Positions 13,836-45,816 are shown, counted from the first letter of the stretch. The stretch is DNA of 64,000 nucleotides from IMGVR_UViG_3300046787_000286:62001-126000, one strand, 5' to 3'. Program-made: numbers and translations. The notes: a model not told the origin generated them from the letters alone.

Positions 13836-13872
13836 ACAACAATTATATATGACTTCTTTTAAAAAGTCAATA

Positions 13873-13895
13873 GAAAAGCCCACCGAAGTGGGCTT
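13873..13895 (-). terminator. intrinsic terminator
   Basis: AAGCCCAC-TTCG-GTGGGCTT-TTC. Confidence 0.8.
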
Positions 13896-13915
13896 AATAG
13901 TTAATCTAGTTTAGA

Positions 13916-14464: not shown

Positions 14465-14546
14465 GTAATTTCCTTTTAGTTAAAATGACTTGCGTCACTT
14501 TACATTATATATTCGTAGCTACGTTAAGTCAAGTAAAAACGACAAA

Positions 14547-15101: not shown

Positions 15102-15119
15102 ATAGCTAAGAAAGTTAAA

Positions 15120-15194
15120 TGGTGCGACTGGAGGATTACGATACCTCGACCCAGCGATTATGAGTCGCTTGCTCTTCCTCTGAGCTACAGTCGC
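15120..15194 (-). tRNA. trnI: tRNA-Ile2(CAT), lysidine type
   Basis: AGCGA-CTCATAA-TCGCT arm typical of Ile2; CCA; promoter at 15203-15231. Confidence 0.8.
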
Positions 15195-19813: not shown

Positions 19814-20602
19814 TTACTTTTTAAACACAGGAATTGGATTCATCTTGTGTATGTTGCGAGCACGAATCTCTCGATACTTCTTGAGTTGTGCTTTTTCTGT
19901 CTTGGTCAATGCTAGTGGATCCCATACACAGTTATCAGCTTGATCTAGTGCCATTGCATGTTCTAACTCTGGGTAAGTCATTCCTAACTGTGACTCGTCT
20001 GTGCGGTCGTCGTCCCATAACCCATCTGTTGGCGGTGCGTTAATGATCTCTTGCTCGATGCCCAATTCTCGAGCTATAGCCCACACTTCAGTTTTTAAGC
20101 AGTCGCCAATTGGGCTGATGTCTACACCGCCGTCGCCATACTTGGTAAAGAAGCCAACACCAAAGTCTTCTACTTTATTGCCAGTGCCTACAACAATACC
20201 GTTATGGCATTGTGCAATTTGATACAGCGTCATCATACGTAAACGAGCACGTGAGTTTGCTGATGCTAGCTTGTATGTATCATATGTGTCATCCTCGATT
20301 CCACAGAAAGGATCTACTTTCTTTTCGAATGCAGAAAACACTGGAGTTAAATCCATGCTCATGTGTGTAACGTTGTCAAACCGCTCTACTAGCCAACCGG
20401 CATGCAATGAGCTACGTTTGTCTAGCTTTTTATTCTGACGAATTGGCATTTGCACAACAATAGTTTTCAGCCCGGTCTTGGCACATAAAGTGCTAACAAC
20501 TGAGCTATCGATGCCGCCGGAGATACCAACAACTAGTGTAGTGACCTTTGCCTTCTTGGCATAGTCTTTGATCCATTTTGTAATTTGTGCGTGTAATTTC
20601 AT
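19814..20602 (-). CDS. nadE: NH3-dependent NAD+ synthetase
   Basis: SGGIDS PP-loop, NSRARLRM, GTGNKVE, FFTKYGDG, PTDGL...TDE...LG..Y; start MKLHAQ overlaps the queE stop. Confidence 0.88.
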   Translation of the reverse strand: MKLHAQITKWIKDYAKKAKVTTLVVGISGGIDSSVVSTLCAKTGLKTIVVQMPIRQNKKLDKRSSLHAGWLVERFDNVTHMSMDLTPVFSAFEKKVDPFCGIEDDTYDTYKLASANSRARLRMMTLYQIAQCHNGIVVGTGNKVEDFGVGFFTKYGDGGVDISPIGDCLKTEVWAIARELGIEQEIINAPPTDGLWDDDRTDESQLGMTYPELEHAMALDQADNCVWDPLALTKTEKAQLKKYREIRARNIHKMNPIPVFKK

Positions 20603-21459
20603 TATTTCCCCCAACCATTTCCCCACAAGTCGACGTGTAGTCGTGGACTGTAGTTGTAACCTTTGCTTAGTGCCCAATCTGCAACCTTAACACGGTTAGC
20701 AGCATAAGGAGTAACAACACCGCCTTGTGGCATTACATATACAACCCCAGTAAAGCCACCTGCTCTAAATTCTTTCACAGCACGTTCGACTTCGGCAAAG
20801 TGTTCTTCTGTTTCAACAACGAACTTAAGATACGTTGTACCATAGTCTTGATACATGCGTACAATTTCTGGGCGAATAGCTTCTTCCCACAGTTCACCAC
20901 TTGCACTTAGTTTAGCACTAACACTAAATGTAATTTCATTACCAGGACGATCACCCCAGTCTAACAAGTAGTCAATGAACTTAGGTTGCAAAGTTTGTGT
21001 GCCATTTGTTTCAAATGTAATATTCTTCAAGTCTGCCATATCCGGATGATCCAGCAGCTCTTGGTAAGCACGTTGCCAGCCTAACAAAGGCTCGCCACCT
21101 GTGATAACCAAATGTACATCGTTGCCGTTATCCTGTACCCAATGTTTGTTGGGAGTCAACGCCAACATTTGATCCACTAGGTCTTTGGTCTCAACCATCG
21201 GACTCAGTTCTTTAAACGCAGGATGCCAACTTGCGTAGCTGTCGCATCCAGTATTAACAAGGGGTAGACTAGTAAAATCCTTATACATCTCGATGTTCTT
21301 CGCCACGTCGTCTGCCTCTTTCGAAGTCTCGCCCGGCTTGCAACCGAAGCCCGAACAAGTAAAGTTACATCCGAAGGTTCGTAAGAATACTGAAGGAACG
21401 CCAACAAAGCGTCCTTCGCCCTGGGCAGAGTAAAAGAGTTCACTGATTTTTAATTTCAT
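20602..21459 (-). CDS. queE: 7-carboxy-7-deazaguanine synthase
   Basis: ELFYSAQGEGRFVGVPSVFLRTFGCNFTC...CDS, ITGGEP, ETNGT, RLHVDLWG. Confidence 0.92.
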   Translation of the reverse strand: MKLKISELFYSAQGEGRFVGVPSVFLRTFGCNFTCSGFGCKPGETSKEADDVAKNIEMYKDFTSLPLVNTGCDSYASWHPAFKELSPMVETKDLVDQMLALTPNKHWVQDNGNDVHLVITGGEPLLGWQRAYQELLDHPDMADLKNITFETNGTQTLQPKFIDYLLDWGDRPGNEITFSVSAKLSASGELWEEAIRPEIVRMYQDYGTTYLKFVVETEEHFAEVERAVKEFRAGGFTGVVYVMPQGGVVTPYAANRVKVADWALSKGYNYSPRLHVDLWGNGWGK

Positions 21460-21512
21460 AGTGTATTTAGACAAGATATTTTATATGCTATTATAATGGT
21501 TAAATAGATTTT

Positions 21513-24751: not shown

Positions 24752-24760
24752 GGTATCTCC

Positions 24761-29386: not shown

Positions 29387-29884
29387 TTACGCAAATAGAT
29401 CTTCGTTCCATTCACGGTGGCCTTCTCGATACGCCATGTTGCTTTGTGTTTCGCGCACTTCAACACGATAGCACCATAAACGATCTGCTTCGCCAGGTCC
29501 CCACATCTCAGGAATGTAAACACCATTTACATACTTGTACAGCATGTCGCTTAGTGCTTCACAACCTAGTGCAGGTAGCACAACGATCTTGGCCATGTTC
29601 TTCTCTTGTAGCAGTTTAAATGTTTCCAACTCTGGATCATCTTGTGCAACAATAAGCGTATGGTCGAATTGGTCTTCCAGTGTCTTCTTTAGTTCCTTGA
29701 GACCGCCGTAGTCTGCGGCCCAGTTACGAACGTCTAGATCATTGGTTCCAAAATAGAACTTCATTGAAAAAGCGTAGCCGTGGATTAAGTTACAGTGACT
29801 ATCAGCACGCCATTGTCTGTAAGCAACAGGGAAGGCGTTGTGATACTCTTTTGTAGAGGTGTATTTGTATTGGATGGGTGTCAT
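29387..29884 (-). CDS. queD: 6-carboxy-5,6,7,8-tetrahydropterin synthase
   Basis: HCNLIHGY (CxxxHG), FDHT, VEVRET. Confidence 0.88.
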   Translation of the reverse strand: MTPIQYKYTSTKEYHNAFPVAYRQWRADSHCNLIHGYAFSMKFYFGTNDLDVRNWAADYGGLKELKKTLEDQFDHTLIVAQDDPELETFKLLQEKNMAKIVVLPALGCEALSDMLYKYVNGVYIPEMWGPGEADRLWCYRVEVRETQSNMAYREGHREWNEDLFA

Positions 29885-30081: not shown

Positions 30082-30483
30082 TCATTTTGGTAACTGATAG
30101 CCGCCACTTTTGTAGTTTGCTTGCCCGTGAATAACACCACGCACACCGCCGATTGGGTTAGCACAGTCACCGGTTTTGCGAGGAATCAGATGCACATGCG
30201 GATACATTACTGTTTGGCCAGCAGCTTCGCCCATGTTGATTCCAACGTTGAATGCATCACACATGCCTTCATCAACTAGTTTCTGGCCATGATAAAATGC
30301 ACGTTTAAAACAGTGTTCGATTGTGGCGCCATTGTTTGTTACAGGCACAAACAACAAGTGTCCCTTAGCAACAGGAAATCTATCTTGAAATACTGCGACT
30401 TGTAGATCACTAAGTTCGTGAACTTTTAAATCCCAAGGCGCTACACCTGCTTGTGCGGCCTTGTCTAATGTATTGTATTTCAT
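30082..30483 (-). CDS. HIT-family hydrolase
   Basis: PVAKGHLL, AAGQTVMYPHVHLIPR (HxH triad region). Confidence 0.9.
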   Translation of the reverse strand: MKYNTLDKAAQAGVAPWDLKVHELSDLQVAVFQDRFPVAKGHLLFVPVTNNGATIEHCFKRAFYHGQKLVDEGMCDAFNVGINMGEAAGQTVMYPHVHLIPRKTGDCANPIGGVRGVIHGQANYKSGGYQLPK

Positions 30484-32288: not shown

Positions 32289-32990
32289 TTAACGTGGTGC
32301 AAACTCTTGTTGAAGTTTGATGTTGTCAAAGAACTCTTTCTTTACCGAAGCATCTGTCTTAAATGCACCATTAAGAACTGTCGTCTGGGTGAGACTAGAG
32401 TGAGCCATAATACCACGATTCTCACAGCATCCATGGGTAGCTTGGATATAAACTGCAACATCTTTGGATCCAGTTGCAAATTCAATTTCACGAGCGATGT
32501 CCATACAGAGTTCTTCTTGTAGTGTTCCTCGTCGAGCACACCATTGCGCAATTCGAGTGTATTTCGAAAGGCCAATGAGTTTTGGTCCAGCAATAATGCC
32601 AATATAAGCCACACCCGTAACAGGCTGGTGATGATGCGAACACATGCTCTTAAGCTCTGAACGCACAACCAACATACCATCGTAGGCTCCTTCTGTATCA
32701 TTGGGGAAAGCCGTAGCATTAGGGCTCTCCTCGTATCTGCCAGCCATGATTTCATATACATACATCTTTGCTAAACGGCGTGCTGTACCCATTGAGTTTG
32801 GATCGTTTTGTCGATCAATAATCAAACTGTCTAGCACACCTTCAAACTTGCCTGTGAGCTCATCCACTAGCAAGTCTTTTTCTTTATCAGTAATAAAGTC
32901 ACTGATGTTATCACCTGCCCAGTAACGCTTGTCTGCGTCAGTTAATCGTTTGCGAATTACTTGTGATAGGTTTAAACTGTTGTCTGTCAT
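32289..32990 (-). CDS. folE: GTP cyclohydrolase I
   Basis: SMCSHHHQP, GLSKYTR, QEEL, HGCCENRG. Confidence 0.95.
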   Translation of the reverse strand: MTDNSLNLSQVIRKRLTDADKRYWAGDNISDFITDKEKDLLVDELTGKFEGVLDSLIIDRQNDPNSMGTARRLAKMYVYEIMAGRYEESPNATAFPNDTEGAYDGMLVVRSELKSMCSHHHQPVTGVAYIGIIAGPKLIGLSKYTRIAQWCARRGTLQEELCMDIAREIEFATGSKDVAVYIQATHGCCENRGIMAHSSLTQTTVLNGAFKTDASVKKEFFDNIKLQQEFAPR

Positions 32991-32991: not shown

Positions 32992-33585
32992 TTAGTCCTT
33001 AATTGTGATGGTTCTTAAATCTGGGTATTCAACTAGCTTGGGTTTAACTGGAAACTCTTTAATACCTTGCAGTAGTGCAATTCCTTTGACTGCTTCTTCT
33101 GGTGTAGGTTTATAGTGATAACCAACCCTAAACTCTTTCTGTTGTTCCCACGGTGATATATTTAGATCGCGACCGTCGTATCGCATACGAATTATTACAT
33201 CATACGCTGCTTTGTCATCTAACAGTATAGCACCACCACGGCCTATATGTAAAGGCTTTGTGTGCCCAAAGCTCAAACATTGCATTTGCCCTTCGCGATA
33301 CATGTTCTTTTCTAGTCTACGTGCTGAATCCCAAATTCGAGTTTTTCTAAACTTGTATTCGCCTACCCACTGTTCATTACCTTCGTAGTAGTATTGAATT
33401 TTCAACTTGTGCATTAGCATCGGAATACTCAAGTAAGTAAAAGGTGTGAACGCACAAAACTCAACCTTGTCATATCTCATACAAAGCTCAATAGCGTGAG
33501 TGCAACAATCGGTCATGATTGCATACGGTGCGCCAGTATATTCTGCTAGTGCGATTTCAAATCGATTAATATCGTCAAATGTCAT
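32992..33585 (-). CDS. short DegT/DnrJ-type PLP aminotransferase-like protein
   Basis: DCCTHAIEL, DSA, SFGHTKPL..GRGGAIL. Confidence 0.75.
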   Translation of the reverse strand: MTFDDINRFEIALAEYTGAPYAIMTDCCTHAIELCMRYDKVEFCAFTPFTYLSIPMLMHKLKIQYYYEGNEQWVGEYKFRKTRIWDSARRLEKNMYREGQMQCLSFGHTKPLHIGRGGAILLDDKAAYDVIIRMRYDGRDLNISPWEQQKEFRVGYHYKPTPEEAVKGIALLQGIKEFPVKPKLVEYPDLRTITIKD

Positions 33586-34532
33586 TTGTTATACCAATTC
33601 CATGCATGTTGAATCATTGCATCTAAATCGTGGTGACGCCAAGCTCCAGCTACTAAATCGAACTTAGCCGAAGTAGCAGTTAACGTTGCAGGATCTCCAG
33701 ACCGTGCTGCACTGATATGAATATTAGGACGCTTACCGGTAATTTCTGTTGCACGTAGTATCACCTGCTGAACTGAGTGTCCATGATTTGATCCAAGATT
33801 ATAGATACCTGCAGGAATCTTGTGATAGATCGCCAAAGCATGTGCTCTAGCAATGTCTTCAACATGAACATAATCACGAACGCAGGTACCGTCAGCAGTA
33901 GGGTAATCCATCCCATAAACCTCAAATGTAGATCCATCCTTTGCAGCCTCTAAGAATTTAGCAATTAAATGAGTAGCACCTGGCTCTTGTCCATGGCAGC
34001 CCTTTGGGTCAGCACCACAGGCATTAAAATAACGAAAGCTAACGTAGTCCAAGCCATATGCTCGATGATATGACTTTAGAATCATGTCAATCATATACTT
34101 GCTTTCGCCATAAGGACTAATAGGTAATTCCGGGAACGATTCGTCTATTGGATTCAGCACTGGCTCGCCGTATGTAGCTGCTGAAGAACTAAAAATAAAT
34201 TTAGTCTTAGGTAAACTCTTGCGAACAATGTCCAACAACTTTAGAGTTTTAACCACATTGTTGTTGTAGTATTCACTAGGATCTTTTACACTTGGTCCAA
34301 CAAGACTAGTGCCAGCACAGTGAATAATAGCATCAGGTTGTTTTGCAATAATCCAGCTTAGAGCCACATCGCTAGCAAAGTCCTGGTACAAGTATCCGTC
34401 GCACACGCCTAACAAATGCTTAGGCGGATCTCTACGATCGATGCCGTACACCACGTGCCCTGCGTCTTTCAACAACAGGGCAGTTTGTCCGCCAATGTAG
34501 CCGGCTGAGCCAGTAACAATTACAGTTGACAT
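33582..34532 (-). CDS. galE: UDP-glucose 4-epimerase
   Basis: GSAGYIG, SSSAATYG, PYGESK, RYFNACG, DGTCVRDYVHV. Confidence 0.9.
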   Translation of the reverse strand: MSTVIVTGSAGYIGGQTALLLKDAGHVVYGIDRRDPPKHLLGVCDGYLYQDFASDVALSWIIAKQPDAIIHCAGTSLVGPSVKDPSEYYNNNVVKTLKLLDIVRKSLPKTKFIFSSSAATYGEPVLNPIDESFPELPISPYGESKYMIDMILKSYHRAYGLDYVSFRYFNACGADPKGCHGQEPGATHLIAKFLEAAKDGSTFEVYGMDYPTADGTCVRDYVHVEDIARAHALAIYHKIPAGIYNLGSNHGHSVQQVILRATEITGKRPNIHISAARSGDPATLTATSAKFDLVAGAWRHHDLDAMIQHAWNWYNK

Positions 34533-35723
34533 TTAGTACTTTGCCCCAGCAACGTGGTCACGATAGCGGTTGCCCGATCGATCCCATTGAGTACCGTAAC
34601 CAGTGATGATATCAACAATGCGACCAACAGTTCCGTCGTTCCAATCACTAATCTTTCCAGCATCTGGGTGTAGTCCTGACATTAACATTTCAAGTTTTCT
34701 GATTGCGTCTGACTGACTCCATGGGATATATAAACGGTCAGGGCAGTTTGCAAATGTTTCAGGGAAACTGCGATAAGCAGGATACAGAACATTGCTTCCC
34801 AGAGTGTCAGCTTCTGAGACTGTGTTAGAGACCCAATCTTGTAAAGCACAATTAAAAAGCACACGGGTATCATTGAGTAGATTATAGTAATCATTTTTGC
34901 TCAGGTTGTCGTAGATCTTGATCTTACCTTGCTCTGCTAAAGTTCTTGCTCTTGAGACATACTCCGGATTGTTAGATCTTAACTCACCACCTTGAAAGAT
35001 AGCAAACTCCACGCCAGGAAATCTTTCTTGATATGCTTCAGCAAGATCCATAAAGAAGCCAGGTTGCTTTTCTTGGTCGAACCTGGCCGCAAAGCCAACA
35101 CGTAGAGACCGTTCTCCAAACGGCTTTTTATTTGCTTCGCCGCCGATGCGCTCAAGAACTTCTGCTTTTCCGAATGCAAGACCGGAAATGTTGTAGATTG
35201 GAGCAGTCCATCCAGCAATTCGCATATGGGCAACCATCTCTTCGTTGGTAGCAAGAACTGCACCACCGGATGTTTTAACCAGTTCATTAACCATCTGCTC
35301 ATACAAGCCCATCCATTTACTCATGCCCCATACATGGACAAAATCGTCTGGATCAATAGCTTGAGCCAAACAACGCACAAACACCCTTGGTCGCATACTA
35401 GCAGGAACTTGGTCCATGATGTACGGCAAGGATTCAATACCTGGTTGAAACATGTCTTCGAAGTAGATGACATCTTCATTAGTGACTTCGCCTTCGCGCA
35501 TCATCTTGACCAAGTTCATAAGTTGACTCATGCCAAAGTATGAGCGACCGTGTGCATCTAGCACTTGGCCCACAACAATGCTCTTTGAGTTATCTAGTGT
35601 GTTGCCGGGAACGTACACAACGTCTAGTCCACGTGAGTCAAACACACGCTTGTTCCATTCTGTTAGCTGTAGCGTATAACGGGCTTCGTAGCTCTCTAGG
35701 CCCATATAAAATAGTTTTCTCAT
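34533..35723 (-). CDS. GT-B (GT1/GT4-like) glycosyltransferase
   Basis: ARFDQEKQP, NCALQDWVSNTVSEA donor-binding pattern. Confidence 0.75.
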   Translation of the reverse strand: MRKLFYMGLESYEARYTLQLTEWNKRVFDSRGLDVVYVPGNTLDNSKSIVVGQVLDAHGRSYFGMSQLMNLVKMMREGEVTNEDVIYFEDMFQPGIESLPYIMDQVPASMRPRVFVRCLAQAIDPDDFVHVWGMSKWMGLYEQMVNELVKTSGGAVLATNEEMVAHMRIAGWTAPIYNISGLAFGKAEVLERIGGEANKKPFGERSLRVGFAARFDQEKQPGFFMDLAEAYQERFPGVEFAIFQGGELRSNNPEYVSRARTLAEQGKIKIYDNLSKNDYYNLLNDTRVLFNCALQDWVSNTVSEADTLGSNVLYPAYRSFPETFANCPDRLYIPWSQSDAIRKLEMLMSGLHPDAGKISDWNDGTVGRIVDIITGYGTQWDRSGNRYRDHVAGAKY

Positions 35724-37061: not shown

Positions 37062-37283
37062 TTAGATCAAGCGACCAAGTCTGCGGGCATCTTCTTCCCA
37101 CATGTTCTTTGCGTACTTGCCTGACGTGTATTTAGAATACTGTTGCCATGCATAACTTTTAAAGTTATACAAGTCTGCTTCGTTGAAGCGGTAGCCGTAA
37201 CTGGCTACAAACTCTCGGAAGTTATCTAAATCCTCGAGGATTTGTTGGACTTTAGCATTATGCTTGATTTGAGGTTTGGACAT
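37062..37283 (-). CDS. hypothetical protein
   Basis: AAGGA RBS. Confidence 0.7.
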   Translation of the reverse strand: MSKPQIKHNAKVQQILEDLDNFREFVASYGYRFNEADLYNFKSYAWQQYSKYTSGKYAKNMWEEDARRLGRLI

Positions 37284-37294: not shown

Positions 37295-37891
37295 TCAGTA
37301 GTAATTAATGTCGTTATTGATATGCCAGTGGTTGTGTAAAACTTGTGCTTGTTCCTGATCTACATTCTTATTTAGAAAAGTGTTAAGACCGGGAATAATA
37401 TCATGTGCGGTTAAGTTGGGATGCCAGAAGTCATTTAATGCTATAGTATAAATGTTTTCTGGTAGTCCTGTAAAGTACGTTTGGTAAAAGTAAGGCTGAT
37501 AAAGGTAAAGTTGCTCTTCGTCAAGATAGTACGGATGGCTCATTTGGCCTAATCTATTTTGTCGAATGTTAAGTAGATATCTATCTCGAGCGGTATCAAT
37601 AGTTACAACAATAAATTTTTTATCAACGATTGCGTTAATCTGATCTCTTTGGGTTGCTAACTCTCCAAAATGACCATGTATAATGTATTCACGATGAGGA
37701 TCTTGCGCCGCAGCTTCTACTCGAAACGGTTGCACGTTTCTGCCCGAGGTAGAATGAACCTCACGTTCGCCACAGGTGTACACTTCGATGTTGAGATCAC
37801 TACTGTTGCCAAAACTTTTATCAAGGCACAGTATATTTTTAAGATGATTACCTCCGCCGCTTGGCGGGTAGGCAATTACAAGTGCAGTCAT
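37295..37891 (-). CDS. hypothetical protein, possibly sulfotransferase-like
   Basis: IAYPPSGGGNHL loop. Confidence 0.45.
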   Translation of the reverse strand: MTALVIAYPPSGGGNHLKNILCLDKSFGNSSDLNIEVYTCGEREVHSTSGRNVQPFRVEAAAQDPHREYIIHGHFGELATQRDQINAIVDKKFIVVTIDTARDRYLLNIRQNRLGQMSHPYYLDEEQLYLYQPYFYQTYFTGLPENIYTIALNDFWHPNLTAHDIIPGLNTFLNKNVDQEQAQVLHNHWHINNDINYY

Positions 37892-38334
37892 TAGATTTTG
37901 ATATTGTTAGCAGGCTGTGTTAGTTCGTATTTGATTAATGCGCCGTTTTCGCCATCTTCGGCAACTTCGATCCATACTGCACGATTAGGAAAACGTTCTG
38001 CAATCTTTACATACAAGTCGTCACTCATCATTTCACATGACTTGAAGTCGAGTTGGAGAGTTCCGTCTCTGTAAAGATTTTCAAGCCATCGTTTAAACTG
38101 GATGAACTCGACATCTCTATCGTTGTGGAATACATCGAGCCAGACTCGAAAATGGAATATATGGCGGTGAGGCACACCAAGAAAACTAACATCATACTCA
38201 TCACCGGTCGCCAGTAATGGATCAGTAGCTGCGGCAGGATATTTGTGTATTCCTTCTTTGCGGAATGTAACCCAGATCTTTCGTTCTGCATGTTGCTTAA
38301 TTCTTTCAATTTGTTCTCGTTCTGCTTGTATCAT
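37891..38334 (-). CDS. dpdL: QueD-paralog T-fold protein, DpdL-like (CDG decarboxylase candidate)
   Basis: FLGVPHRHIF fits the LxxxHRHxF signature as recalled for DpdL; DRDVEFI, SCEM. Confidence 0.62.
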   Translation of the reverse strand: MIQAEREQIERIKQHAERKIWVTFRKEGIHKYPAAATDPLLATGDEYDVSFLGVPHRHIFHFRVWLDVFHNDRDVEFIQFKRWLENLYRDGTLQLDFKSCEMMSDDLYVKIAERFPNRAVWIEVAEDGENGALIKYELTQPANNIKI

Positions 38335-38600
38335 AATGCTTTCATACTTTCTGCTGTGATAATTTTACTAAGTTCTTCGCCGAGCTTGGCATCGTCGTGT
38401 ACAATGTAAAACCCGATAAAGCTCATGTCTTTAACTTTGTTGTATGTGGTTGTTTCGATTGCAACACCACCTGCACCTTTGTACACGTCAATGCGTATAG
38501 AGTTTGATTCTAGTACTCTGCCATCACGCCCTACTTCAATTGGATCTTCGTCAATTGACCAAGCCCAGTGCAATACTTTGCGTTTTAACCATTTGATCAT
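38331..38600 (-). CDS. hypothetical protein
   Basis: ATGA-coupled. Confidence 0.65.
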   Translation of the reverse strand: MIKWLKRKVLHWAWSIDEDPIEVGRDGRVLESNSIRIDVYKGAGGVAIETTTYNKVKDMSFIGFYIVHDDAKLGEELSKIITAESMKAL

Positions 38601-39106
38601 AATAGACTGTCTTTACTGTATTGATCCCATGACGTAAATGTTTCACGACTCATCAAGCTGTGTAGACTATGTGTCCATACCCCAGGATTAGTTGCATCGA
38701 AATCGTTGTCGTCAATCTTGATCATTGTGTTGTAGTTCCACAATTTAACGTAAGGGATACTTACACGAATTTGTGGGATGAAGTTGTTATATTCACACAA
38801 GCCAGAATCGTTAAACGTTTCTACGTGTGTAATTGGAATGTCTAGACTGCACATATACCCGCGATCTAAGAAGGCGGTAATCATGGTTTCCCAGCGTTGC
38901 CATTCTAGTGCGTTCTCGGGATGGAAGCTGTGATTAGCACCAAAGAAGATATGTTCAACTCCCCTAGGGTTCATATCGAAGTGATGCGCAATATCATCAA
39001 TTGACTGTACGCCAACCACGAACAAAGTTTGTTTTCCAAAAGCAGGAGTACGCTCTACCTCTTCACCAAAAAAGAAGTTAACGTTGTCATGGCCTTCACG
39101 ATTCAT
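38597..39106 (-). CDS. hypothetical protein between dpdA and dpdL
   Basis: coupled to dpdA; GANHSF motif. Confidence 0.7.
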   Translation of the reverse strand: MNREGHDNVNFFFGEEVERTPAFGKQTLFVVGVQSIDDIAHHFDMNPRGVEHIFFGANHSFHPENALEWQRWETMITAFLDRGYMCSLDIPITHVETFNDSGLCEYNNFIPQIRVSIPYVKLWNYNTMIKIDDNDFDATNPGVWTHSLHSLMSRETFTSWDQYSKDSLL

Positions 39107-40769
39107 TGTGTATATCCTCTTCCATTTTGTCTAGTGCTGTTGTATCTAATTGTACAGTATCATCTGTGGTTTCTGCAACCTCAGGTTCTTCTAAATCAAA
39201 CAATGCATTAAATTGAGTTCGGGCATTTAGAGCTTTTTTACCTTTGAAGCCTCGTGTGCCTACAATTTCCATCCAATATGTCGAGTATGTTTCAATGATA
39301 GCTTCAGCACTATCGCGATCTGGTGCAGCAAAGATAGCTTCTACAATGTCTTGAAAGCGAGCATAATCGCCAGTGCTGCGTCGCATCATCTTTGGATGTT
39401 GACCGGCGTCAAATCGTCGATTGGCTTCTTGTACAGCAGTCAGATGCATCCAAACATTATGGCCCATTAGTAATGCGTAGCTAAAACTATCCCAAGAAGT
39501 TTTACCTTCCTTGCCATTCTTATTTAGATCACCGGGCTTGTAGATACAGATGTCCTTCATTGTGAGCATATCACTAATTGGGCTATCTTCCCAACGAGGA
39601 TACACACCATCTGCAACTACTCCGTCCGACCATTTGCGTGTGTCTGTTGCGTACTTTTTGTCGTCTGCTGATGGGGCCATTCTGTAGCTCCACTTTTCGT
39701 CGTGTTCGTATACGTTCTCGAAGTAGACCTGCCCATTCGCAGTCGCCAGAAACGGACTGGCACAATCAAAAGAAATAGTAAAAGCAGGATTGACATATTT
39801 TCTTACAGCTCTCTGAATAACAGTGAGCAATACTGCCCACTCTAGTTTACTTGTACCCAAGAAGTGCATCCAATCATGCTTGCCCTCTTGTAACAAGTTA
39901 TCGTAACGCAATGCTACTAGGCGCTTTAACACCAAGTGTACGTCACACATGTTCTGGCCTCCCATTGACCAACCATCAAAATGCGTGTCGGGATACTTTA
40001 CAGGATCACAAAACTCTTTCATTTCGTGATACCATGCATCGGCAGAGCCGTGATTATCGCCCTGTAGCACGTTTAAGAATTTTGCACCGCCATTGGCAAC
40101 ACCTTTACGATGAGCCATAAAGTACAGGTTATTGTACTTTGTTGCAGCCACAGCTTCTTCTAATGTGGTAATGCCACAAGCGTTAGATGCTTTTTTATCA
40201 TGAATAACCCATGTAGGAATATCCAAGATCATGCCATAGTCGGCAATGTTGTCTAACCATTTAAGAACACCGTCGCGTTTTTTCTGAGCAGCGTCGATTA
40301 GTTTTTGATACTCAGCCGCAGGATCTTTCTTGGTTGTTTTGCCTTTGGCATTAACAGACTCAATTGGTCCAGCTGCTTTTAACGCAGAAAGTTTATCTTG
40401 AACTTCTTTACTTCCTGGATCTCGCCACTCGCCTTCCCAAAGACCTTTTGCGATCTGGAAACCGCCCGAGTCTCCTAAGATGAATGTGCCTGGTTCGCGG
40501 GAGCGTACCATATCCTCTGACCAGTCTTGTTTGGCAAGATCGAGGTTAGCATGTCCTCCAGAGTAGAGTGACCACTTATATGGAAAGAGTCCCTTAGTTG
40601 AGTTGAGCCAATTAAGCTGTTCCATGTCCGTAAGGCCTTGCGGAAATCTTGCTGGATCCACATACTGTTCATTTCTCTGTTTGCCTATAAATGTTCCGTA
40701 GAAGCCAGAGATAGCTGGTAAGAAAACAGCGTAGTCATTCTGCTTGGCAGTTAAGTTATCTTGTGTCAT
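39096..40769 (-). CDS. dpdA: TGT-fold deazapurine transglycosylase (DpdA-like)
   Basis: LGDSGGFQ, LDIP, LNVLQG, HFLG, SFDCASP motifs; co-located with folE/queD/queE. Confidence 0.8.
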   Translation of the reverse strand: MTQDNLTAKQNDYAVFLPAISGFYGTFIGKQRNEQYVDPARFPQGLTDMEQLNWLNSTKGLFPYKWSLYSGGHANLDLAKQDWSEDMVRSREPGTFILGDSGGFQIAKGLWEGEWRDPGSKEVQDKLSALKAAGPIESVNAKGKTTKKDPAAEYQKLIDAAQKKRDGVLKWLDNIADYGMILDIPTWVIHDKKASNACGITTLEEAVAATKYNNLYFMAHRKGVANGGAKFLNVLQGDNHGSADAWYHEMKEFCDPVKYPDTHFDGWSMGGQNMCDVHLVLKRLVALRYDNLLQEGKHDWMHFLGTSKLEWAVLLTVIQRAVRKYVNPAFTISFDCASPFLATANGQVYFENVYEHDEKWSYRMAPSADDKKYATDTRKWSDGVVADGVYPRWEDSPISDMLTMKDICIYKPGDLNKNGKEGKTSWDSFSYALLMGHNVWMHLTAVQEANRRFDAGQHPKMMRRSTGDYARFQDIVEAIFAAPDRDSAEAIIETYSTYWMEIVGTRGFKGKKALNARTQFNALFDLEEPEVAETTDDTVQLDTTALDKMEEDIHNES

Positions 40770-41449
40770 TTGGTAAATGCTTTGTTGATTAAATTATAGT
40801 CCTCTTTGTACGCTTCTTTAACACGTAGTAGTAGATCGGGTCTACTATCCAATAACTTTTTAAAAAAATCCTGGAGAACTTTTGTTTCGTTATTTGTTGC
40901 ACCATAATTGCGATCGAGGTCGACGCCGGGCAAAAGGCCATGGGGTGGAGCAAAATTTTTGTCAAAATTTTGATCTAGCATAAAATACTTTCTTTCCACA
41001 TATGGTCGAATATCTTGAATGAATGCATACTGTGGCCATACATGATCATCGAATCTATAGATATTATCAAATATCAATCTCTCAGTTGACAGATTGTAAA
41101 AATTAATAAATTCTTGTGCTGAAAGTGAAGCATTTGCATCGATGTTTGCCCAGGGAGAATTGGGCAGTATTGGGCCGTTTGGACCAATTGGGCATAACAC
41201 ATACGTTGTTAAATATTGTGCAATGCCGCTGATCCAGCGATCGACTGGATCTCTTAAAATAACGCTAATCTGATTAACGTTAGCCCAATTATCGCCGGTT
41301 AACTCTGCGGTTATCCATTCATATTGTCTTGCCCAGCTATGTACATAGCTACTGGCATTTTTTGGAATGTTAAGTATGAATTTTGTTTTGCTAGGACTTA
41401 GCAACCCAGAAGCCATCCCATACCCGCGATCCTTGAGCGTTACATTCAC
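40766..41449 (-). CDS. sulfotransferase family protein
   Basis: IPKNASS (5'-PSB) and RDPVDRWISG (3'-PB). Confidence 0.75.
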   Translation of the reverse strand: MNVTLKDRGYGMASGLLSPSKTKFILNIPKNASSYVHSWARQYEWITAELTGDNWANVNQISVILRDPVDRWISGIAQYLTTYVLCPIGPNGPILPNSPWANIDANASLSAQEFINFYNLSTERLIFDNIYRFDDHVWPQYAFIQDIRPYVERKYFMLDQNFDKNFAPPHGLLPGVDLDRNYGATNNETKVLQDFFKKLLDSRPDLLLRVKEAYKEDYNLINKAFTK

Positions 41450-42168
41450 TTGCTTTGTGCCGGAAGAATGAAGTTGTATGTAGCAATGCCTGAGTTAACA
41501 GTAATCATTGCAGCGCCATCGTCACTAACTTTCATGACCTTGTCACCTGTTAAGCTCAAAATTGAGATAACGGTGTTAATTGGCCATGACCATGCACGTT
41601 TGAGTTGGCCTTTAACGCCAGGTTCAAACACAAAACTACCTGAGTGGGTAGAATGGTCGCCGAAGCTAAACTTCAAGTCGCCGTTTTCTGTTTTTGCTTG
41701 GAACACAGTTTCTTCTGCGTTAGCTTGGGCCTGCATTTTTAAACGCATGATGCTAGCGGCACTAGGTTCGAATTCAATATGCCAGTTAACGCCTTTGAAC
41801 TTAACAGTTTTTAACTTTTCATTGATAATTTCACTAGACATGAAACGGTAGTTGTTCTTGAAGTCGCCTACGGCATTTTCAAAGTTGATACCATCTGGTT
41901 GTGCATCTGCTCGCTTGGTAATGCTTAACTTGGCATTCTCTTTATACTCTTGGATGTTAAGTAAGATTTTAAGTTTGTTCAAGTTCGGCATACCAAATGT
42001 GCCAATAAACTCTGGCACAGGTCCGGCATATTGCCCTTCGATAACAACACTTCGATCTTCTGCAAGACCAGCGATAGTAGTTGTAGTGTCGTCTCCGACA
42101 ATTTTAACTAGGTCAATACAGCCTAGGTCGTATGTGTGACTTACTAAGTCAAGTAAATGATCTCTCAT
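41446..42168 (-). CDS. probable sliding clamp (gp45-like)
   Basis: 240 aa, two-domain alpha/beta pattern, FGMPNLNKL, close to PolB. Confidence 0.5.
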   Translation of the reverse strand: MRDHLLDLVSHTYDLGCIDLVKIVGDDTTTTIAGLAEDRSVVIEGQYAGPVPEFIGTFGMPNLNKLKILLNIQEYKENAKLSITKRADAQPDGINFENAVGDFKNNYRFMSSEIINEKLKTVKFKGVNWHIEFEPSAASIMRLKMQAQANAEETVFQAKTENGDLKFSFGDHSTHSGSFVFEPGVKGQLKRAWSWPINTVISILSLTGDKVMKVSDDGAAMITVNSGIATYNFILPAQSK

Positions 42169-42211: not shown

Positions 42212-43156
42212 TCAAGTCTTATGGACAACTTTTGCAAGAGCTTGTCCTCCTCTTAAGCTACTTAATGTACCGGGCTTTTGTAGCTCGATCCATGTAGTTG
42301 GTAGATTGTCATTCCAGATAAAATAAATTTCGTATCCGATCTGACGAGCAATATCCTTTACTAGTTTTCCCGGAGTGTAGCATGCATAGTAACTTTCTGC
42401 TAACCTAACTGCTTTTTCATTGTCGCAGTCATTGAAGGTCATCATTAGTCTACCGCCAGGCTTTAGTTTGGAAAAGATTTCTTGTAACCATCTTTCGATT
42501 ACTTGCACAGGAGTAAACTCAAAAAAGTTATAAGCAACACATACTGCAAATTGCGAATCTGGTAACCGTTCTAGTATAGGTCTTGAATGATCACGATCGT
42601 CAACAATTACAGGGCGCAATCGACGCTGGTACTGATCCGGGAACCCAAGGGTACAAGGAAACAACATGTCATTGCTACGATCTATTAGATACAACGGATC
42701 AAAACTAACCATATGTTCAACAAATGTTTCTAGTCCAGGACGTATGATCATACCTGGATGTAAATTTGTACTGAAATTTTTAATACGTGCTCGGATAATG
42801 CTATCGTGCTCGGCTGTTAACACAGGTCTACGATTGAGTATATGCTCGTCTGTGTCGTTTACCATTTCTTGATCATACAAGCGATACGTTTCGTCGAGCC
42901 AGTACTGTTCTTTAAGATCGATTTCTTGCTGTGCTTCTGCTTTAGCTTGCGCAACAAGATCTACAAACCGATCAAACTCGTGATGCATCGATTGGTGAAC
43001 ATCGGCCATTTGTTGTTTAAGATTAGTTGGATCAAAGTCCTTGCTGTTAACAAGATGTTTAATTTGACTTAGATCTGTATCAACTTGAGACCGTGCTTCC
43101 TCGACATGAAGACGATTTAATTGATTGCGGTAAGCAACTAGTTCACTTAGTTTCAT
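42212..43156 (-). CDS. coiled-coil + methyltransferase-like protein
   Basis: YNFFEF...LKPGGRLMMTF Rossmann end. Confidence 0.6.
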   Translation of the reverse strand: MKLSELVAYRNQLNRLHVEEARSQVDTDLSQIKHLVNSKDFDPTNLKQQMADVHQSMHHEFDRFVDLVAQAKAEAQQEIDLKEQYWLDETYRLYDQEMVNDTDEHILNRRPVLTAEHDSIIRARIKNFSTNLHPGMIIRPGLETFVEHMVSFDPLYLIDRSNDMLFPCTLGFPDQYQRRLRPVIVDDRDHSRPILERLPDSQFAVCVAYNFFEFTPVQVIERWLQEIFSKLKPGGRLMMTFNDCDNEKAVRLAESYYACYTPGKLVKDIARQIGYEIYFIWNDNLPTTWIELQKPGTLSSLRGGQALAKVVHKT

Positions 43157-45816
43157 GTGAAATCAAACAAAGAAGTAAATGTATTATCTGTGTTAGTAGC
43201 AGACGCAAGATCCCACTCTAACACACCCAGCAAGTTATCAACTTTGCCATCAATAACAGTAGCTTCCATTAGCGAATCATCAAACGGCAACTCAGAGAAC
43301 CATTGTGGTAGACGTTGCTCGTCAGTAGGATAACCAATCGAAGTCCACCCTAGTGGATTATCCCGTAGTTTACATACAATAGTTTTCATGCCGTCAACAA
43401 TTTGCATCGAATAGTTGTCGCTATTCATGCGGCGCAACGTATTCCAGTTTAGTGCAGCTCTAACGTGCCCTGGCATGTTTGCTCGTCCTAGTCGTGCTTC
43501 TTCTGCACCGTACTTGGTCAAGTTGTTTACACGCTTGGGAGAACCCTTTTCCCAACCTGGGCGCTCTTTGAACTCGTATTTGAATTTGCGAATTTTCTCA
43601 ATGATATCGTCTCGCGACACACCGGTTAGAACGTCATACAAAATTCCACTCAAGAAGTCTTGAATAACTTTGGGAGTATCCGAACGTTTCAAGTCCAAGC
43701 CCATGGCTTTTACTTTGCCAGGCTTGCCGTCTGTGTCGACTCGTTTGCCTTCTTTGTCGATGATCATTACAGCATAACGCTTTTTAGTAATAAACAAACC
43801 TTTACTTGCAACTACTTCGCGCCCGCCCTTGATTACTGATCCCATTTCCCGTGGAACGTGGAAGGCTTGTTCCATAAAGCCCGGAAAACTAATATTAACC
43901 TGATCTGCAATAGAGTCATATAGCTGGATAGCAATATCTTTGCTCCACGCCATGCGCCCTTCTTCAACTTCCTTTTGGAGAACTGGCCAGGCTGAGAAAT
44001 AGCACGAATCGGTATCACCGTAGATGATCGTGTCACCAACATGATCATATTTGCCGGTAATGCATTCGTTGACATACGCATCCATGTGTTTCGCGATGCT
44101 ACGCCCAGTAAGAGTGGTTGATTGACCAATACGCTTGTCAAAGAAACGACAGCCCGCATTAAGGATGGCGCCATAAAGTGAGTTAAGGTTAATTTTCTTA
44201 ACCAGTTGTCGTTTGTCCCAGTATTCTTCATCTTCTTTAGTCTCGCACTGTTTGAGCTTGGCCTGCATTTCCTTACGTTCGGCATACCAACGCTTTAACA
44301 AGCCGGGGATAACACCTTCTTTTTCATAAGTGAAGATAGTACCGTTAGCACTGATACCCCAAGGTTGGTTTGAGTCAAAGATCATGTGCCAAACTTCGGC
44401 AGCACTGTGAACAGTTGATTCTCCGCCTTCCCAGTCGATTGTGATCTCTGTGCCTCGTTGTTGCTCCATTACAGCAGTATACTCTAATGTAGCAAACAAT
44501 CCTTCCCAGGCAGCAGCAAAGCTCATCTTCTGCTTTTCCATACGCTCTTTAATGAGCCTATCTGTCATTGTGAGTCTAAGCTGTCCGACAATCGTTTCCG
44601 GTCCCATGTTAAGAGCACGGATTGTTGACGGGTAGAGCGAGTTAATGTCAATGGACCCGACATACTCGTGGACTCCTTTTTTGGGATAAGCAACATAGGC
44701 ACCTGCGGCTTGTGTGTCTTCATCATTGAGTCTTTCTTTACGGTTGGGAACTACCATGCCACGTTCGTGGGCTTCGTTAATGATTGCTTGCTCTGTTACT
44801 GCTACAGCACCCATTGTGGTTTGTAGCAACACAGTGTTTTCGTGTGCCAGTGTATTGGCCAAGTCAAGGAACTTGAGTTTCTTGTCTAGCTTGGCTAACA
44901 ACACAGTATCTTGACGGTTGTAGTCAATGAACGTTTTGAAGTTCTGATTGTAAAGTTGATCCAGAGTACCTTCGTACTGCGTCTTACGCTCGTCGAGTTC
45001 GTACTCGCCGATAGCATCTAGTGAATAACTGTGACGCTCTTCGTATGTGTATTTGCGATACAGTTGCATATAGTCCAAATGCACACGACCTACTAGATCA
45101 AATGTTAGACTTTCTGTGCCGTAGCGTTCAAACATACGTTGTTTAGGTAACTGCCCCCACAAGCAAAAACGTCGAGTGTCGTCCTTGCTCAAGATTCGAG
45201 TAATACGCATCACAGTGTATGGAATATCGAAACCTTCTGAGTTCCAGCCACTAAGTGCATCTGCATCTTCGATTAGATCAAGGAATGTTTTTAACATATC
45301 CTCTTCCTTCTCAAACACCAGAGTGTTTTCAAACTCGCTAGCAATTTCTTGTGCTGTTTCCATACTCATGTGTCGAGGTGGAATAACCAAAGTGACTAGC
45401 TGTTCGAGCCAGTCAAGGTATACAGAGATAGCAGTGATTTTGTTAAAGGGATCGTCAGGTCGACTGTAACCCTTTACTGGATCAAAGTCGACCTCAATGT
45501 CGAAAAATGCTGTTTGCAGTTTCGGAGCATCCTGTCCTTTGAAGTTGTCTTCTAAACAACGAAAGATAGGATTGATGTCTGATTCATAAAGTTGCTTGCC
45601 GGAATGCATGCGAACTTCTTTGCGGAATTCCTTGTTAGTACGTGTACTAAATCTAGCAACTGGATTGCCAAAAATGTTTTGAAATTTACCGCGTGGGTCG
45701 TCGTAATAGAACACATAGTTAGCAGGGAACTCTTGATAGATTCTCTTGCCGTTCTTGCGTTCTACAACATGGATGCGATCGTGCTCACGATCAAATAGTG
45801 CGTCTACGTAACTCAT
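43153..45816 (-). CDS. family B DNA polymerase
   Basis: exo DIEVD, GWNSEGFDIPY, YNRQD; pol DINSLYPS, KINLNSLYG, YGDTDS; no intein. Confidence 0.97.
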   Translation of the reverse strand: MSYVDALFDREHDRIHVVERKNGKRIYQEFPANYVFYYDDPRGKFQNIFGNPVARFSTRTNKEFRKEVRMHSGKQLYESDINPIFRCLEDNFKGQDAPKLQTAFFDIEVDFDPVKGYSRPDDPFNKITAISVYLDWLEQLVTLVIPPRHMSMETAQEIASEFENTLVFEKEEDMLKTFLDLIEDADALSGWNSEGFDIPYTVMRITRILSKDDTRRFCLWGQLPKQRMFERYGTESLTFDLVGRVHLDYMQLYRKYTYEERHSYSLDAIGEYELDERKTQYEGTLDQLYNQNFKTFIDYNRQDTVLLAKLDKKLKFLDLANTLAHENTVLLQTTMGAVAVTEQAIINEAHERGMVVPNRKERLNDEDTQAAGAYVAYPKKGVHEYVGSIDINSLYPSTIRALNMGPETIVGQLRLTMTDRLIKERMEKQKMSFAAAWEGLFATLEYTAVMEQQRGTEITIDWEGGESTVHSAAEVWHMIFDSNQPWGISANGTIFTYEKEGVIPGLLKRWYAERKEMQAKLKQCETKEDEEYWDKRQLVKKINLNSLYGAILNAGCRFFDKRIGQSTTLTGRSIAKHMDAYVNECITGKYDHVGDTIIYGDTDSCYFSAWPVLQKEVEEGRMAWSKDIAIQLYDSIADQVNISFPGFMEQAFHVPREMGSVIKGGREVVASKGLFITKKRYAVMIIDKEGKRVDTDGKPGKVKAMGLDLKRSDTPKVIQDFLSGILYDVLTGVSRDDIIEKIRKFKYEFKERPGWEKGSPKRVNNLTKYGAEEARLGRANMPGHVRAALNWNTLRRMNSDNYSMQIVDGMKTIVCKLRDNPLGWTSIGYPTDEQRLPQWFSELPFDDSLMEATVIDGKVDNLLGVLEWDLASATNTDNTFTSLFDFT

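What the first reader, a model, noticed from the sequence alone, without database searches (positions are those of the whole stretch)
37891..40769. FolE-QueD-QueE-DpdL-DpdA route without QueC: predicted 7-deazaguanine (dDG) DNA
Seen: folE (32289), queD (29387), queE (20602), a TGT-fold DpdA-like enzyme and a second QueD-like T-fold protein with LGVPHRHIF; no queC or queF in the window. Established: FolE/QueD/QueE make CDG and DpdA exchanges deazaguanines into DNA. From memory, DpdL is a QueD paralog with LxxxHRHxF that decarboxylates CDG to 7-deazaguanine in Cellulophaga phage phiST. Inference: this phage replaces some G with dDG (anti-restriction). The gene at 38597-39106, coupled to dpdA, is a candidate new pathway component.
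Basis: partly seen in the sequence, partly recalled or inferred. Interest (0 to 1): 0.8.

Follow-up and report, generated by a model that had tools for sequence, protein, structure and literature searches.

The report
QueC-less deazaguanine DNA-modification module

Summary
The window holds folE, queD, queE, a DpdL-family protein carrying LGVPHRHIF, and a 557-aa enzyme with a TGT fold and catalytic motifs. No queC or queF was found in the window or in 1.13 Mb of 89 related loci.

The 557-aa protein is not the DpdA3 of phage phiST. It belongs to a large, unnamed, Pfam-invisible clade of the TGT/DpdA superfamily, shared with Pseudomonas phage PA5oct.

Among DpdL-encoding phages, six lineages pair DpdL with DpdA3 and have no glycosyltransferase nearby. 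These include phiST, the only group with dDG shown by mass spectrometry. Seven lineages, including this one, pair DpdL with a "DSGG"-type DpdA and always carry a GT4 glycosyltransferase.

In this lineage the conserved block is dpdA-p169-dpdL-p73-GT4-epimerase-DegT-like-folE-HIT-queD. It is also present in PA5oct and ACP17 and has no recognisable fold relative.

Verdict: a 7-deazaguanine DNA modification is well supported. Plain dDG as the end product is only one possibility, and a sugar-decorated derivative is a live alternative. I class it as a new variant of a known kind.

The parts
39096..40769 (-). DpdA-like base-exchange enzyme (557 aa), in an unnamed clade of the TGT/DpdA superfamily
   Evidence: AF2 model has pLDDT 90.4. 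The top three Foldseek PDB hits are bacterial TGT 5lpt (E 1.4e-6) and archaeosine TGT 1j2b and 1iq8. hhalign against E. coli TGT gives 89.5% with all motifs in register. D100, S101, G103, H302 and D335 are invariant in 67 diverse members. There is no Pfam hit.
38597..39106 (-). p169, a conserved protein of unknown fold; candidate partner of the DpdA-like enzyme
   Evidence: Lies between dpdA and dpdL in 78-80 of 80 viral loci and in MAG loci. Homologues occur only in PA5oct (gp121) and ACP17 (gp122, next to its dpdA). No Pfam, PDB or BFVD relative apart from ACP17 gp122. Overlaps dpdA by 11 nt.
38331..38600 (-). p89, a variable small ORF
   Evidence: Detected in only 27 of 80 related loci at 25-44% identity. 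One weak PHROG hit.
37891..38334 (-). DpdL-family T-fold protein (proposed CDG decarboxylase)
   Evidence: Carries the LGVPHRHIF motif. tblastn: ACP17 56%, RHph_I1_18 58%, phiST 33% at 5e-9. Family invariants are H30, H56, H58, H70, E76, E101 and E126. hhalign against QueD gives 86.5%. PTPS is the only Pfam family among its Atlas neighbours.
37295..37891 (-). p198, an accessory gene
   Evidence: Found in 3 of 80 related loci. No family hit.
37062..37283 (-). p73, a small conserved protein following dpdL
   Evidence: Found in 50 of 80 loci, always after dpdL.
34533..35723 (-). GT4-type (GT-B) glycosyltransferase
   Evidence: A family profile hits only GT4 enzymes in the PDB (WlaC/PglH 2.2e-5, GlgM 4e-4). 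Atlas neighbours carry PF00534 and PF20706. Homologues sit beside dpdL in ACP17, PA5oct, Phosso, X1, BUCT-ZZ01 and BCSR5.
33582..34532 (-). NAD-dependent NDP-sugar epimerase/dehydratase, abutting the GT4 gene
   Evidence: PF01370, E 7e-52. Found in 47 of 55 related loci that have room downstream of GT4, directly adjacent in 35. The same pairing occurs in the distant locus L099.
32992..33585 (-). DegT-like short protein (197 aa)
   Evidence: Partial PF01041 match, E 7e-14. Conserved at 52-76% identity in 40 loci between the epimerase and folE.
32289..32990 (-). FolE, GTP cyclohydrolase I
   Evidence: PF01227, E 2.5e-38; NCBIfam FolE models.
30082..30483 (-). HIT-domain protein between folE and queD
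   Evidence: PF01230, E 1.8e-8. Found in 25 related loci at the same place.
29387..29884 (-). QueD (CPH4 synthase)
   Evidence: PF01242, E 8e-15. 53% identical to ACP17 QueD.
20602..21474 (-). QueE (CDG synthase, radical SAM)
   Evidence: QueE NCBIfam models at about 1e-10. 47% identical to BUCT-ZZ01 QueE.
40766..41449 (-). p227, a sulfotransferase-like accessory gene upstream of dpdA
   Evidence: Weak PF03567 hit, E 0.0013. Found in 6 of 80 loci.
41446..42168 (-). p240, sliding-clamp-like protein at the head of the tightly packed gene chain
   Evidence: 32% identical to the protein Phosso annotates as 'sliding clamp beta' (annotation). phrog_12062. Found in 73 of 80 loci.
43153..45816 (-). 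Family B DNA polymerase, the conserved upstream neighbour
   Evidence: PF00136, E 5.5e-38. 51% identical to the PA5oct and Phosso polymerases.

Best explanation
This is a QueC-independent system that replaces guanine in the phage's own DNA with a 7-deazaguanine base.

**Proposed pathway**
- FolE, QueD and QueE convert GTP to 7-carboxy-7-deazaguanine (CDG). This is established chemistry for these families; the gene identities are shown here.
- The DpdL-family T-fold protein is taken to remove the carboxyl group, giving 7-deazaguanine. This is inferred from phiST, where DpdL phages contain dDG. The activity has never been shown biochemically.
- The 557-aa enzyme exchanges the base for G in DNA by the covalent Asp mechanism of tRNA-guanine transglycosylases. 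It keeps the TGT barrel, the DSGGFQ aspartate, the guanine-recognising Asp and Gln, and the nucleophile Asp of FDC. The fold and residues are shown; the DNA substrate is inferred.

**Additional components**
- p169 is made from an overlapping reading frame, and its most conserved segment is predicted disordered when modelled alone. I take it to be an accessory subunit or helper of the exchange step. This is speculative.
- The GT4 glycosyltransferase, its abutting NDP-sugar epimerase and the DegT-like gene lie inside the same conserved block. I think they probably add a sugar to the inserted base or its precursor.
- The end product would then be dDG or, as I lean, a decorated DG.

**Function:** protection of the phage DNA from restriction.
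For: - **Gene identities:**
- **TGT fold and motif register:**
- **Homology to phage transglycosylases:** ACP17 gp123, 96.5%; X1 'queuine tRNA-ribosyltransferase', 95.5%.
- **Independent context:** the same clade sits inside a QueC/QueF/FolE cluster in Vibrio phage 2.275.O. This ties the clade to deazaguanine metabolism by a second route.
- **Conserved order:** polB-clamp-dpdA-p169-dpdL-p73-GT4-epimerase-DegT-like-folE-HIT-queD holds across 80 viral and 9 MAG loci, down to 35-40% DpdA identity. The block is compacted into about 8 kb in L098.
- **No QueC or QueF**.
- **Experimental support in a relative:** PA5oct has the same DpdA clade, DpdL, GT4 and p169. Its DNA resists G-containing restriction enzymes and is attacked by nucleases that sense modified G (PMC12191111).
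- **phiST DpdL phages** contain dDG in place of all G (PMC10516641).
- **DpdL conservation:** the window's DpdL is 58% identical to that of RHph_I1_18, a DpdA3-type phage, so DpdL chemistry is probably shared.
Against: - No chemistry has been measured for this lineage.
- DpdL decarboxylase activity is unproven. ACP17 dpdA+dpdL gave no dDG in E. coli.
- The 557-aa clade fails Pfam TGT and lacks the zinc site of TGT.
- dDG has no obvious hydroxyl for a sugar, so the GT4 acceptor is unknown.
- GT4 and the sugar genes could serve another target.
- p169 is absent from several GT4-bearing DpdL phages: X1, BUCT-ZZ01, BCSR5 and Phosso.
- About 150 kb of the genome was not examined for queC.
Confidence: 0.7

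Rival explanations
1. Plain dDG, exactly as in phiST. DpdL makes 7-deazaguanine, the DpdA-like enzyme inserts it, and nothing further happens. GT4, the epimerase, the DegT-like gene and p169 serve unrelated functions, such as glycosylating virion or host surface components, and merely sit nearby.
For: - DpdL is well conserved between GT4-less and GT4-bearing phages: 58% identity to RHph_I1_18.
- dDG offers no obvious sugar acceptor.
- The window carries a second, separate sugar-nucleotide cluster at 22197-29349. Marine relatives of its NadE come from phages with cell-surface sugar genes.
Against: - GT4 is present beside dpdL or dpdA in 7 of 7 lineages with a DSGG-type DpdA plus DpdL, and in 0 of 6 DpdA3 lineages.
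- The strong hits to this GT4 subfamily among 50,697 phage records are all in DpdL phages.
- GT4 stays inside the compacted cluster in L098 and L099.
- ACP17 dpdA+dpdL alone gave no dDG.
Confidence: 0.35
2. The TGT-like enzyme acts on tRNA. It would insert a 7-deazaguanine at position 34 of the phage's own GUN-anticodon tRNAs rather than into DNA.
For: The window encodes 31 tRNAs, including Asn(GTT), Asp(GTC), His(GTG) and Tyr(GTA), the natural substrates of bacterial TGT. The enzyme keeps every TGT catalytic motif.
Against: - The gene always lies next to the DNA polymerase and clamp, not next to the tRNA array.
- PA5oct DNA itself is G-modified.
- DpdL phages of the phiST group have dDG in DNA.
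- The family lacks the TGT zinc subdomain.
Confidence: 0.05
3. Pre-replicative route. The deazaguanine base is converted to a nucleotide by a phosphoribosyltransferase and kinases and is incorporated by the phage polymerase. The TGT-like enzyme plays only a minor or repair role.
For: A PRTase sits beside queE in BUCT-ZZ01. A PRTase plus an IMPDH/GMP-reductase-like gene sit between folE and queE in L099. The module always adjoins the polymerase.
Against: - No PRTase was found in this window.
- The PRTase and GMP-reductase genes are equally explained as salvage of the guanine released by base exchange.
- A DpdA-family enzyme is present in every known deazaguanine phage (PMC10516641).
Confidence: 0.07
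4. The NadE-like PP-loop amidotransferase next to queE stands in for QueC and amidates CDG, giving dADG as in Campylobacter phage CP220.
For: NadE (19814-20677) abuts queE. It belongs to the same ATP-dependent carboxylate-amidating enzyme class as QueC.
Against: - It passes the curated nadE model (183.7 bits against a cut-off of 63.65).
- It is 46-57% identical to the NadE of Pelagibacter and cyanobacterial phages.
- It is not next to queE in any of the 13 related loci that reach queE.
- The presence of DpdL argues for decarboxylation.
Confidence: 0.03

Closest known systems
Cellulophaga phage phiST dDG system (FolE, QueD, QueE, DpdL, DpdA3; Cui et al., NAR 2023, PMC10516641)
   Same: QueC-less FolE/QueD/QueE set plus a DpdL with LxxxHRHxF. 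The cluster lies next to the DNA polymerase and includes a TGT-superfamily transglycosylase.
   Different: - phiST uses the short DpdA3 (259 aa, no DSGG motif). The DpdA3 HMM does not hit the window, and hhalign gives only 79.8% over 85 columns.
- phiST has no GT4, no p169 and no sugar genes.
- DpdL identity is only 33%.
Pseudomonas jumbo phage PA5oct (Wroclawvirus) gp168-gp167-gp166 with gp162 and gp121
   Same: - Same DpdA clade (34% identity, E 6e-72), GT4, DpdL (53%), QueE and a p169 homologue (41%).
- Polymerase 51% identical.
- Its DNA is shown to carry a modified G (PMC12191111).
- A deazaguanine system was noted by Iyer et al. 2021 (PMC7824862).
   Different: - GT4 lies between dpdA and dpdL.
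- The p169 homologue is 27 kb away.
- No adjacent epimerase or DegT-like pair.
- The chemical identity of the base is also unknown there.
Acidovorax phage ACP17 gp119-gp126 cluster
   Same: The order is queD, folE, p169 homologue (gp122), DpdA (gp123), GT4 (gp124), DpdL (gp125, 56% identical), queE, which is the same component list.
   Different: Its DpdA belongs to a sister clade ('type I', shared with X1 and BUCT-ZZ01) that is only profile-detectable from the window's enzyme. Heterologous dpdA+dpdL gave no dDG.
Bacterial tRNA-guanine transglycosylase (TGT, PF01702) and bacterial DpdA
   Same: TIM-barrel fold, the DSGGFQ aspartate, the Asp and Gln that read guanine, the GG loop, and the nucleophile Asp in FDC.
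   Different: - No zinc-binding CxCxxC..H motif.
- A ~45-residue helical insertion after the DSGG motif and a long C-terminal extension.
- Below Pfam thresholds.
- The pocket positions after GG are hypervariable.

Membership tests
DpdL (proposed CDG decarboxylase; Cui et al. 2023) | Sequence homology to phiST CGPG_00067 and ACP17 DpdL | tested here: met
   tblastn: 56% to ACP17 (1e-40), 33% to phiST (5e-9). Family HMM E 2.9e-61.
DpdL (proposed CDG decarboxylase; Cui et al. 2023) | Signature LxxxHRHxF replacing the QueD motif CxxxHGH | tested here: met
   L52-GVP-H56-R-H58-I-F60. L52, H56, H58 and F60 are invariant in 10 family members. The Arg is Phe in PA5oct and Ahp1.
DpdL (proposed CDG decarboxylase; Cui et al. 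2023) | QueD-like T-fold (PF01242 relationship) | tested here: inconclusive
   No direct Pfam hit. hhalign of the DpdL family against the QueD family gives 86.5%, E 4.5e-6, over 65 columns. PTPS is the only Pfam family among its Atlas neighbours.
DpdL (proposed CDG decarboxylase; Cui et al. 2023) | Context: FolE, QueD, QueE and a DpdA present, QueC absent | tested here: met
   for the window and 89 related loci. The rest of the genome was not examined.
DpdL (proposed CDG decarboxylase; Cui et al. 2023) | CDG decarboxylase activity | not testable with these tools
   Never shown for any member. The heterologous test failed (PMC10516641).
TGT/DpdA superfamily | TGT-type (beta/alpha)8 barrel | tested here: met
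   The model has pLDDT 90.4. The top three Foldseek PDB hits are TGT and ArcTGT (E 1.4e-6 to 1.2e-4, probability 1.0). All other hits have E > 0.01.
TGT/DpdA superfamily | Catalytic Asp pair: the DSGG aspartate and the nucleophile Asp of FDC | tested here: met
   D100 and D335 are invariant in 67 members and align with E. coli D89 and D264.
TGT/DpdA superfamily | Match to Pfam PF01702 at its curated threshold | tested here: not met
   No hit for the window protein. Only 2 of 67 family members give weak hits (best E 0.043).
TGT/DpdA superfamily | Zinc site CxCxxC...H | tested here: not met
   The motif is absent from the window protein, and no conserved Cys column lies in the C-terminal half.
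DpdA3 subfamily (phiST CGPG_00065 type) | Homology to phiST, Ahp1 and RHph_I1_18 DpdA3 | tested here: not met
   The DpdA3 HMM finds nothing in the window. BLASTP is not significant. hhalign gives 79.8% over 85 columns.
DpdA (DNA transglycosylase function) | Acts on DNA rather than tRNA | not testable with these tools
   Indirect support only: polymerase-adjacent synteny and G-modified PA5oct DNA.
GT4 glycosyltransferases (GT-B, PF00534-like) | Profile similarity to solved GT4 enzymes | tested here: met
   The A8 profile hits only GT4/GT-B enzymes: WlaC 2.2e-5, GlgM 4e-4, others weaker. The Atlas agrees. The single sequence gives no Pfam hit.

The most novel reading that the evidence does not exclude
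Phages that combine DpdL with a DSGG-type DpdA do not stop at dDG. This group includes the present freshwater/marine lineage, PA5oct, ACP17, X1, BUCT-ZZ01, BCSR5 and Phosso. On this reading, the co-inherited GT4 glycosyltransferase attaches a sugar to the 7-deazaguanine, either in DNA or before insertion. In this lineage it would be fed by the nested epimerase and DegT-like genes. The product would be a glycosylated 7-deazapurine DNA base of a kind not yet described. p169 would be a new accessory factor of the base-exchange enzyme.
Probability: 0.33. Interest if true: 0.85.

Novelty: new variant of a known kind. Interest (0 to 1): 0.6.

Why it matters
7-Deazaguanine DNA modifications are a major phage counter-measure against restriction and some CRISPR systems. 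The DpdL branch is the least understood: its key enzyme has never worked outside the phage.

This analysis shows that DpdL phages fall into two architectures. Only one of them has a known product.

The other architecture is very abundant in lakes and oceans. More than 7,000 DpdA-like protein clusters (at 90% identity) and about 900 clusters (at 50% identity) were found. It includes the therapeutic candidate PA5oct.

This second architecture always carries a glycosyltransferase and often p169. That gives a concrete explanation for the failed reconstitution (missing components). It also points to a possibly new hypermodified base that can be tested directly in cultured phages.

Tried and rejected
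- **Near-identical DNA in 50,697 phage records:** none found.
- **Sequence searches of the 557-aa protein:** single-sequence and profile searches against PDB sequences found nothing. Only fold search and profile-profile comparison revealed TGT.
- **p169 function:**
  - Pfam on 45 members, a PDB profile search, and Foldseek against PDB and BFVD gave no relative beyond ACP17 gp122.
  - The Atlas lead to SGNH lipases was below its reliability threshold.
  - A resemblance of KIDDxDFxATNPG to a PRPP loop was tested against two PRTases and rejected (0.3% probability).
  - Phosso 'glycosylase' and the BUCT-ZZ01 174-aa neighbour are not p169 homologues.
  - phiST CGPG_00066 is not related to p169.
- **NadE as a QueC substitute:** rejected; see rival explanations.
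- **Promoter and terminator scan:** counts were at or below chance.
- **Sequencing runs:** only assembled contigs of freshwater metagenomes are available, so there is no read-level signal of modified G. Read laying was not used.
- **Context of distant DpdA-like members:** two look-ups returned contigs too short to be informative.
- **Xanthomonas PhiXhv GT hits:** these are a different, more distant GT in an unrelated context.


Full report
**Observation**

All genes in the 64-kb window run on the minus strand.

- Pfam and NCBIfam confirm FolE (32289-32990), QueD (29387-29884) and QueE (20602-21474).
- The 147-aa ORF at 37891-38334 carries FLGVPHRHIFHF.
- The 557-aa ORF at 39096-40769 carries GDSGGFQ and SFDCASPF.
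- From the clamp-like gene at 42168 down to folE at 32289, fourteen ORFs follow each other with overlaps or gaps of at most 23 nt. These include an 11-nt overlap between the 557-aa gene and the 169-aa gene, and 4-nt overlaps on to dpdL.

**DpdL**

The paper that defined DpdL (Cui et al., NAR 2023, PMC10516641) reports three things. Phage phiST has dDG in place of all G. DpdL is a QueD paralogue with LxxxHRHxF. [quoted passage not shown]

- The window protein matches ACP17 DpdL at 56%, RHph_I1_18 at 58%, PA5oct gp166 at 53% and phiST DpdL at 33% (5e-9).
- In a ten-member alignment, H30, L52, H56, H58, F60, H70, E76, E101 and E126 are invariant.
- The link to QueD is detectable only by profile comparison (86.5%) and by language-model and structure neighbours, whose only Pfam family is PTPS.

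**The transglycosylase**

- The 557-aa protein has no Pfam, NCBIfam, PHROG or PDB-sequence hit.
- It is nevertheless one of the most abundant unannotated phage proteins I met. There are 7,188 clusters at 90% identity among the 8,000 scored candidates, and 908 clusters at 50% identity.
- A 67-member alignment has invariant S70, D100, S101, G103, H302 and D335.
- Its AlphaFold model is confident (pLDDT 90.4, pTM 0.89).
- The only significant Foldseek PDB hits are bacterial TGT and archaeosine TGT.
- Profile comparison with E. coli TGT puts every functional motif in register:
  - DSGGFQ (Asp89)
  - LD/FD (Asp143)
  - LQG/IQG
  - the GG loop
  - HFLG/YLMG
  - SFDC/MFDC (nucleophile Asp264)
- The family lacks the TGT zinc motif. 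It is hypervariable at the three positions after the GG loop, which in TGT line the 7-substituent pocket.
- It is related to the phage enzymes ACP17 gp123 (96.5%) and X1 'queuine tRNA-ribosyltransferase' (95.5%), but only weakly to phiST DpdA3.
- In Vibrio phage 2.275.O a member of the same clade sits beside QueF, a YhhQ-like transporter, QueC and FolE. This links the clade to deazaguanine metabolism independently and shows that it serves more than one route.

**The 169-aa gene**

- Its family numbers 3,969 clusters.
- Scans seeded with p169 returned 80 viral contigs and 9 MAG contigs, the latter evidently mis-binned phage DNA. Nearly all show polB-clamp-dpdA-p169-dpdL, even where DpdA identity falls to 35-40%.
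- Among cultured phages it occurs only in PA5oct-like phages (27 kb from dpdL) and in ACP17, where it is directly upstream of dpdA.
- The model is confident for an alpha/beta N-terminal part. It is poor (pLDDT < 50) over the most conserved motif, K130-D132-D133-F136-N140-G142-W144.
- No fold or family relative was found.
- It is a genuine, conserved but not universal component. Its function remains inferred from linkage only.

- ORF 34533-35723 is a GT4-type glycosyltransferase.
- It is homologous to the genes lying next to dpdL or dpdA in ACP17 (gp124), PA5oct (gp167), Phosso, X1/BUDD, BUCT-ZZ01 and BCSR5.
- I ran an HMM census of twelve cultured DpdL phages plus this lineage.
  - Six have DpdA3 and no GT4 within 12 kb: phiST, RHph_I1_18, Ahp1, Bakedbeans, D479 and MA9V-3.
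  - Seven lineages have a DSGG-type DpdA and all have GT4.
  - Vibrio phage 2.275.O has the same DpdA clade but uses a QueC/QueF route, and it has neither DpdL nor GT4.
- In this lineage the GT4 gene abuts an NDP-sugar epimerase/dehydratase and a conserved 197-aa DegT-like gene. These lie between GT4 and folE in most loci. The distant locus L099 repeats the GT4-epimerase pair.
- I found no paper describing a glycosylated deazaguanine in phage DNA.

**Interpretation**

- The core reading is well supported: a QueC-less deazaguanine pathway feeds a DNA base-exchange enzyme. PA5oct strengthens it, because its DNA resists G-containing restriction enzymes and is targeted by nucleases that sense modified G.
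- The specific prediction of plain dDG rests on phiST, which belongs to the other architecture.
- DpdL is well conserved across both architectures, so 7-deazaguanine is probably made.
- The obligatory GT4, the nested sugar genes, p169 and the failed ACP17 reconstitution suggest further steps.
- I therefore give 0.7 to the core mechanism, about one third to plain dDG, and about one third to a sugar-decorated derivative.

**Rivals**

- A tRNA target is conceivable, because the window carries 31 tRNAs including all four GUN-anticodon species. Synteny with the polymerase and the PA5oct data argue against it.
- PRTase and GMP-reductase-like genes in relatives could indicate a nucleotide-level route. 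They fit guanine salvage after base exchange equally well, and this window has none.
- The NadE next to queE is an ordinary phage NAD synthetase.

**Limits**

- No chemistry was measured.
- About 150 kb of the source genome was not seen.
- The lineage counts are not phylogenetically independent.
- The GT4 acceptor is unknown.

Noticed in passing
window 224-15194: A dense array of 31 predicted tRNA genes, plus two tRNA-like predictions of unassigned identity and a tmRNA-like prediction at 13405-13850. The tRNAs include the four GUN-anticodon species Asn, Asp, His and Tyr. All are on the minus strand (ARAGORN only).
   Followed up: partly
window 3141-5813: A likely tRNA-repair set embedded in the tRNA array: a T4 Rnl1-like RNA ligase (3141-4088), an AAA_33 kinase-like protein (4039-4500) and a dual-specificity phosphatase-like protein (5331-5813).
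   Followed up: no
window 22197-29349: A second sugar-nucleotide cluster between queE and queD. It holds an epimerase, a three-domain TPP enzyme (586 aa), a DegT aminotransferase (439 aa), a GDP-mannose-dehydratase-like protein, a SAM methyltransferase and two unknowns. It resembles branched or amino deoxysugar pathways. Parts of it are variable in related loci.
   Followed up: partly
window 19814-20677: An NH3-dependent NAD synthetase (NadE) overlapping the end of queE. It is 57% identical to the NadE of Pelagibacter phage HTVC008M and 46-51% to those of cyanomyophages. It is not linked to queE in related loci.
   Followed up: yes
window 32992-33585: A 197-aa protein matching only the middle of the DegT/DnrJ aminotransferase model. 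It looks like a fragment but is conserved at 52-76% identity in 40 related loci, so it is a real short gene.
   Followed up: partly
window 392-1600 (+), 46552-47154, 52657-53100, 54185-55219: A plus-strand radical-SAM protein (402 aa), ClpP protease, a ferritin-like protein and a NUDIX hydrolase. Two very large ORFs (48163-51807 and 55691-60649) were not analysed.
   Followed up: no
L099:13016-14829 and L085:7093-7554: Relatives carry an IMPDH/GMP-reductase-like gene and a phosphoribosyltransferase inside the deazaguanine cluster. This fits salvage of the guanine released by base exchange, or alternatively a nucleotide-level route.
   Followed up: partly
L108:8905-16000 (Vibrio phage 2.275.O): The same DpdA clade lies in a QueF, YhhQ-like transporter, QueC, amidotransferase-like and FolE cluster with no DpdL. 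This is apparently a preQ1-type system using this unnamed DpdA clade.
   Followed up: partly
L102:11182-12363 and L104:11428-12312: In Vibrio phage Bakedbeans and Chryseobacterium phage MA9V-3 the DpdL domain is the C-terminal part of a much longer ORF (393 and 294 aa), suggesting fusion to another domain.
   Followed up: no
L091-L099: Contigs carrying this phage module are filed in MAGs named Haliscomenobacter, Flectobacillus, Crocinitomicaceae, Neomarinimicrobiota (a 335-kb contig), Pacearchaeota and Rickettsiales. These are probably mis-binned phage genomes and not evidence of host.
   Followed up: no
L087:12408-13232 (Rhizobium phage RHph_I1_18): A macro-domain ('Appr-1-p processing') protein directly follows dpdL in this DpdA3-type phage.
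   Followed up: no
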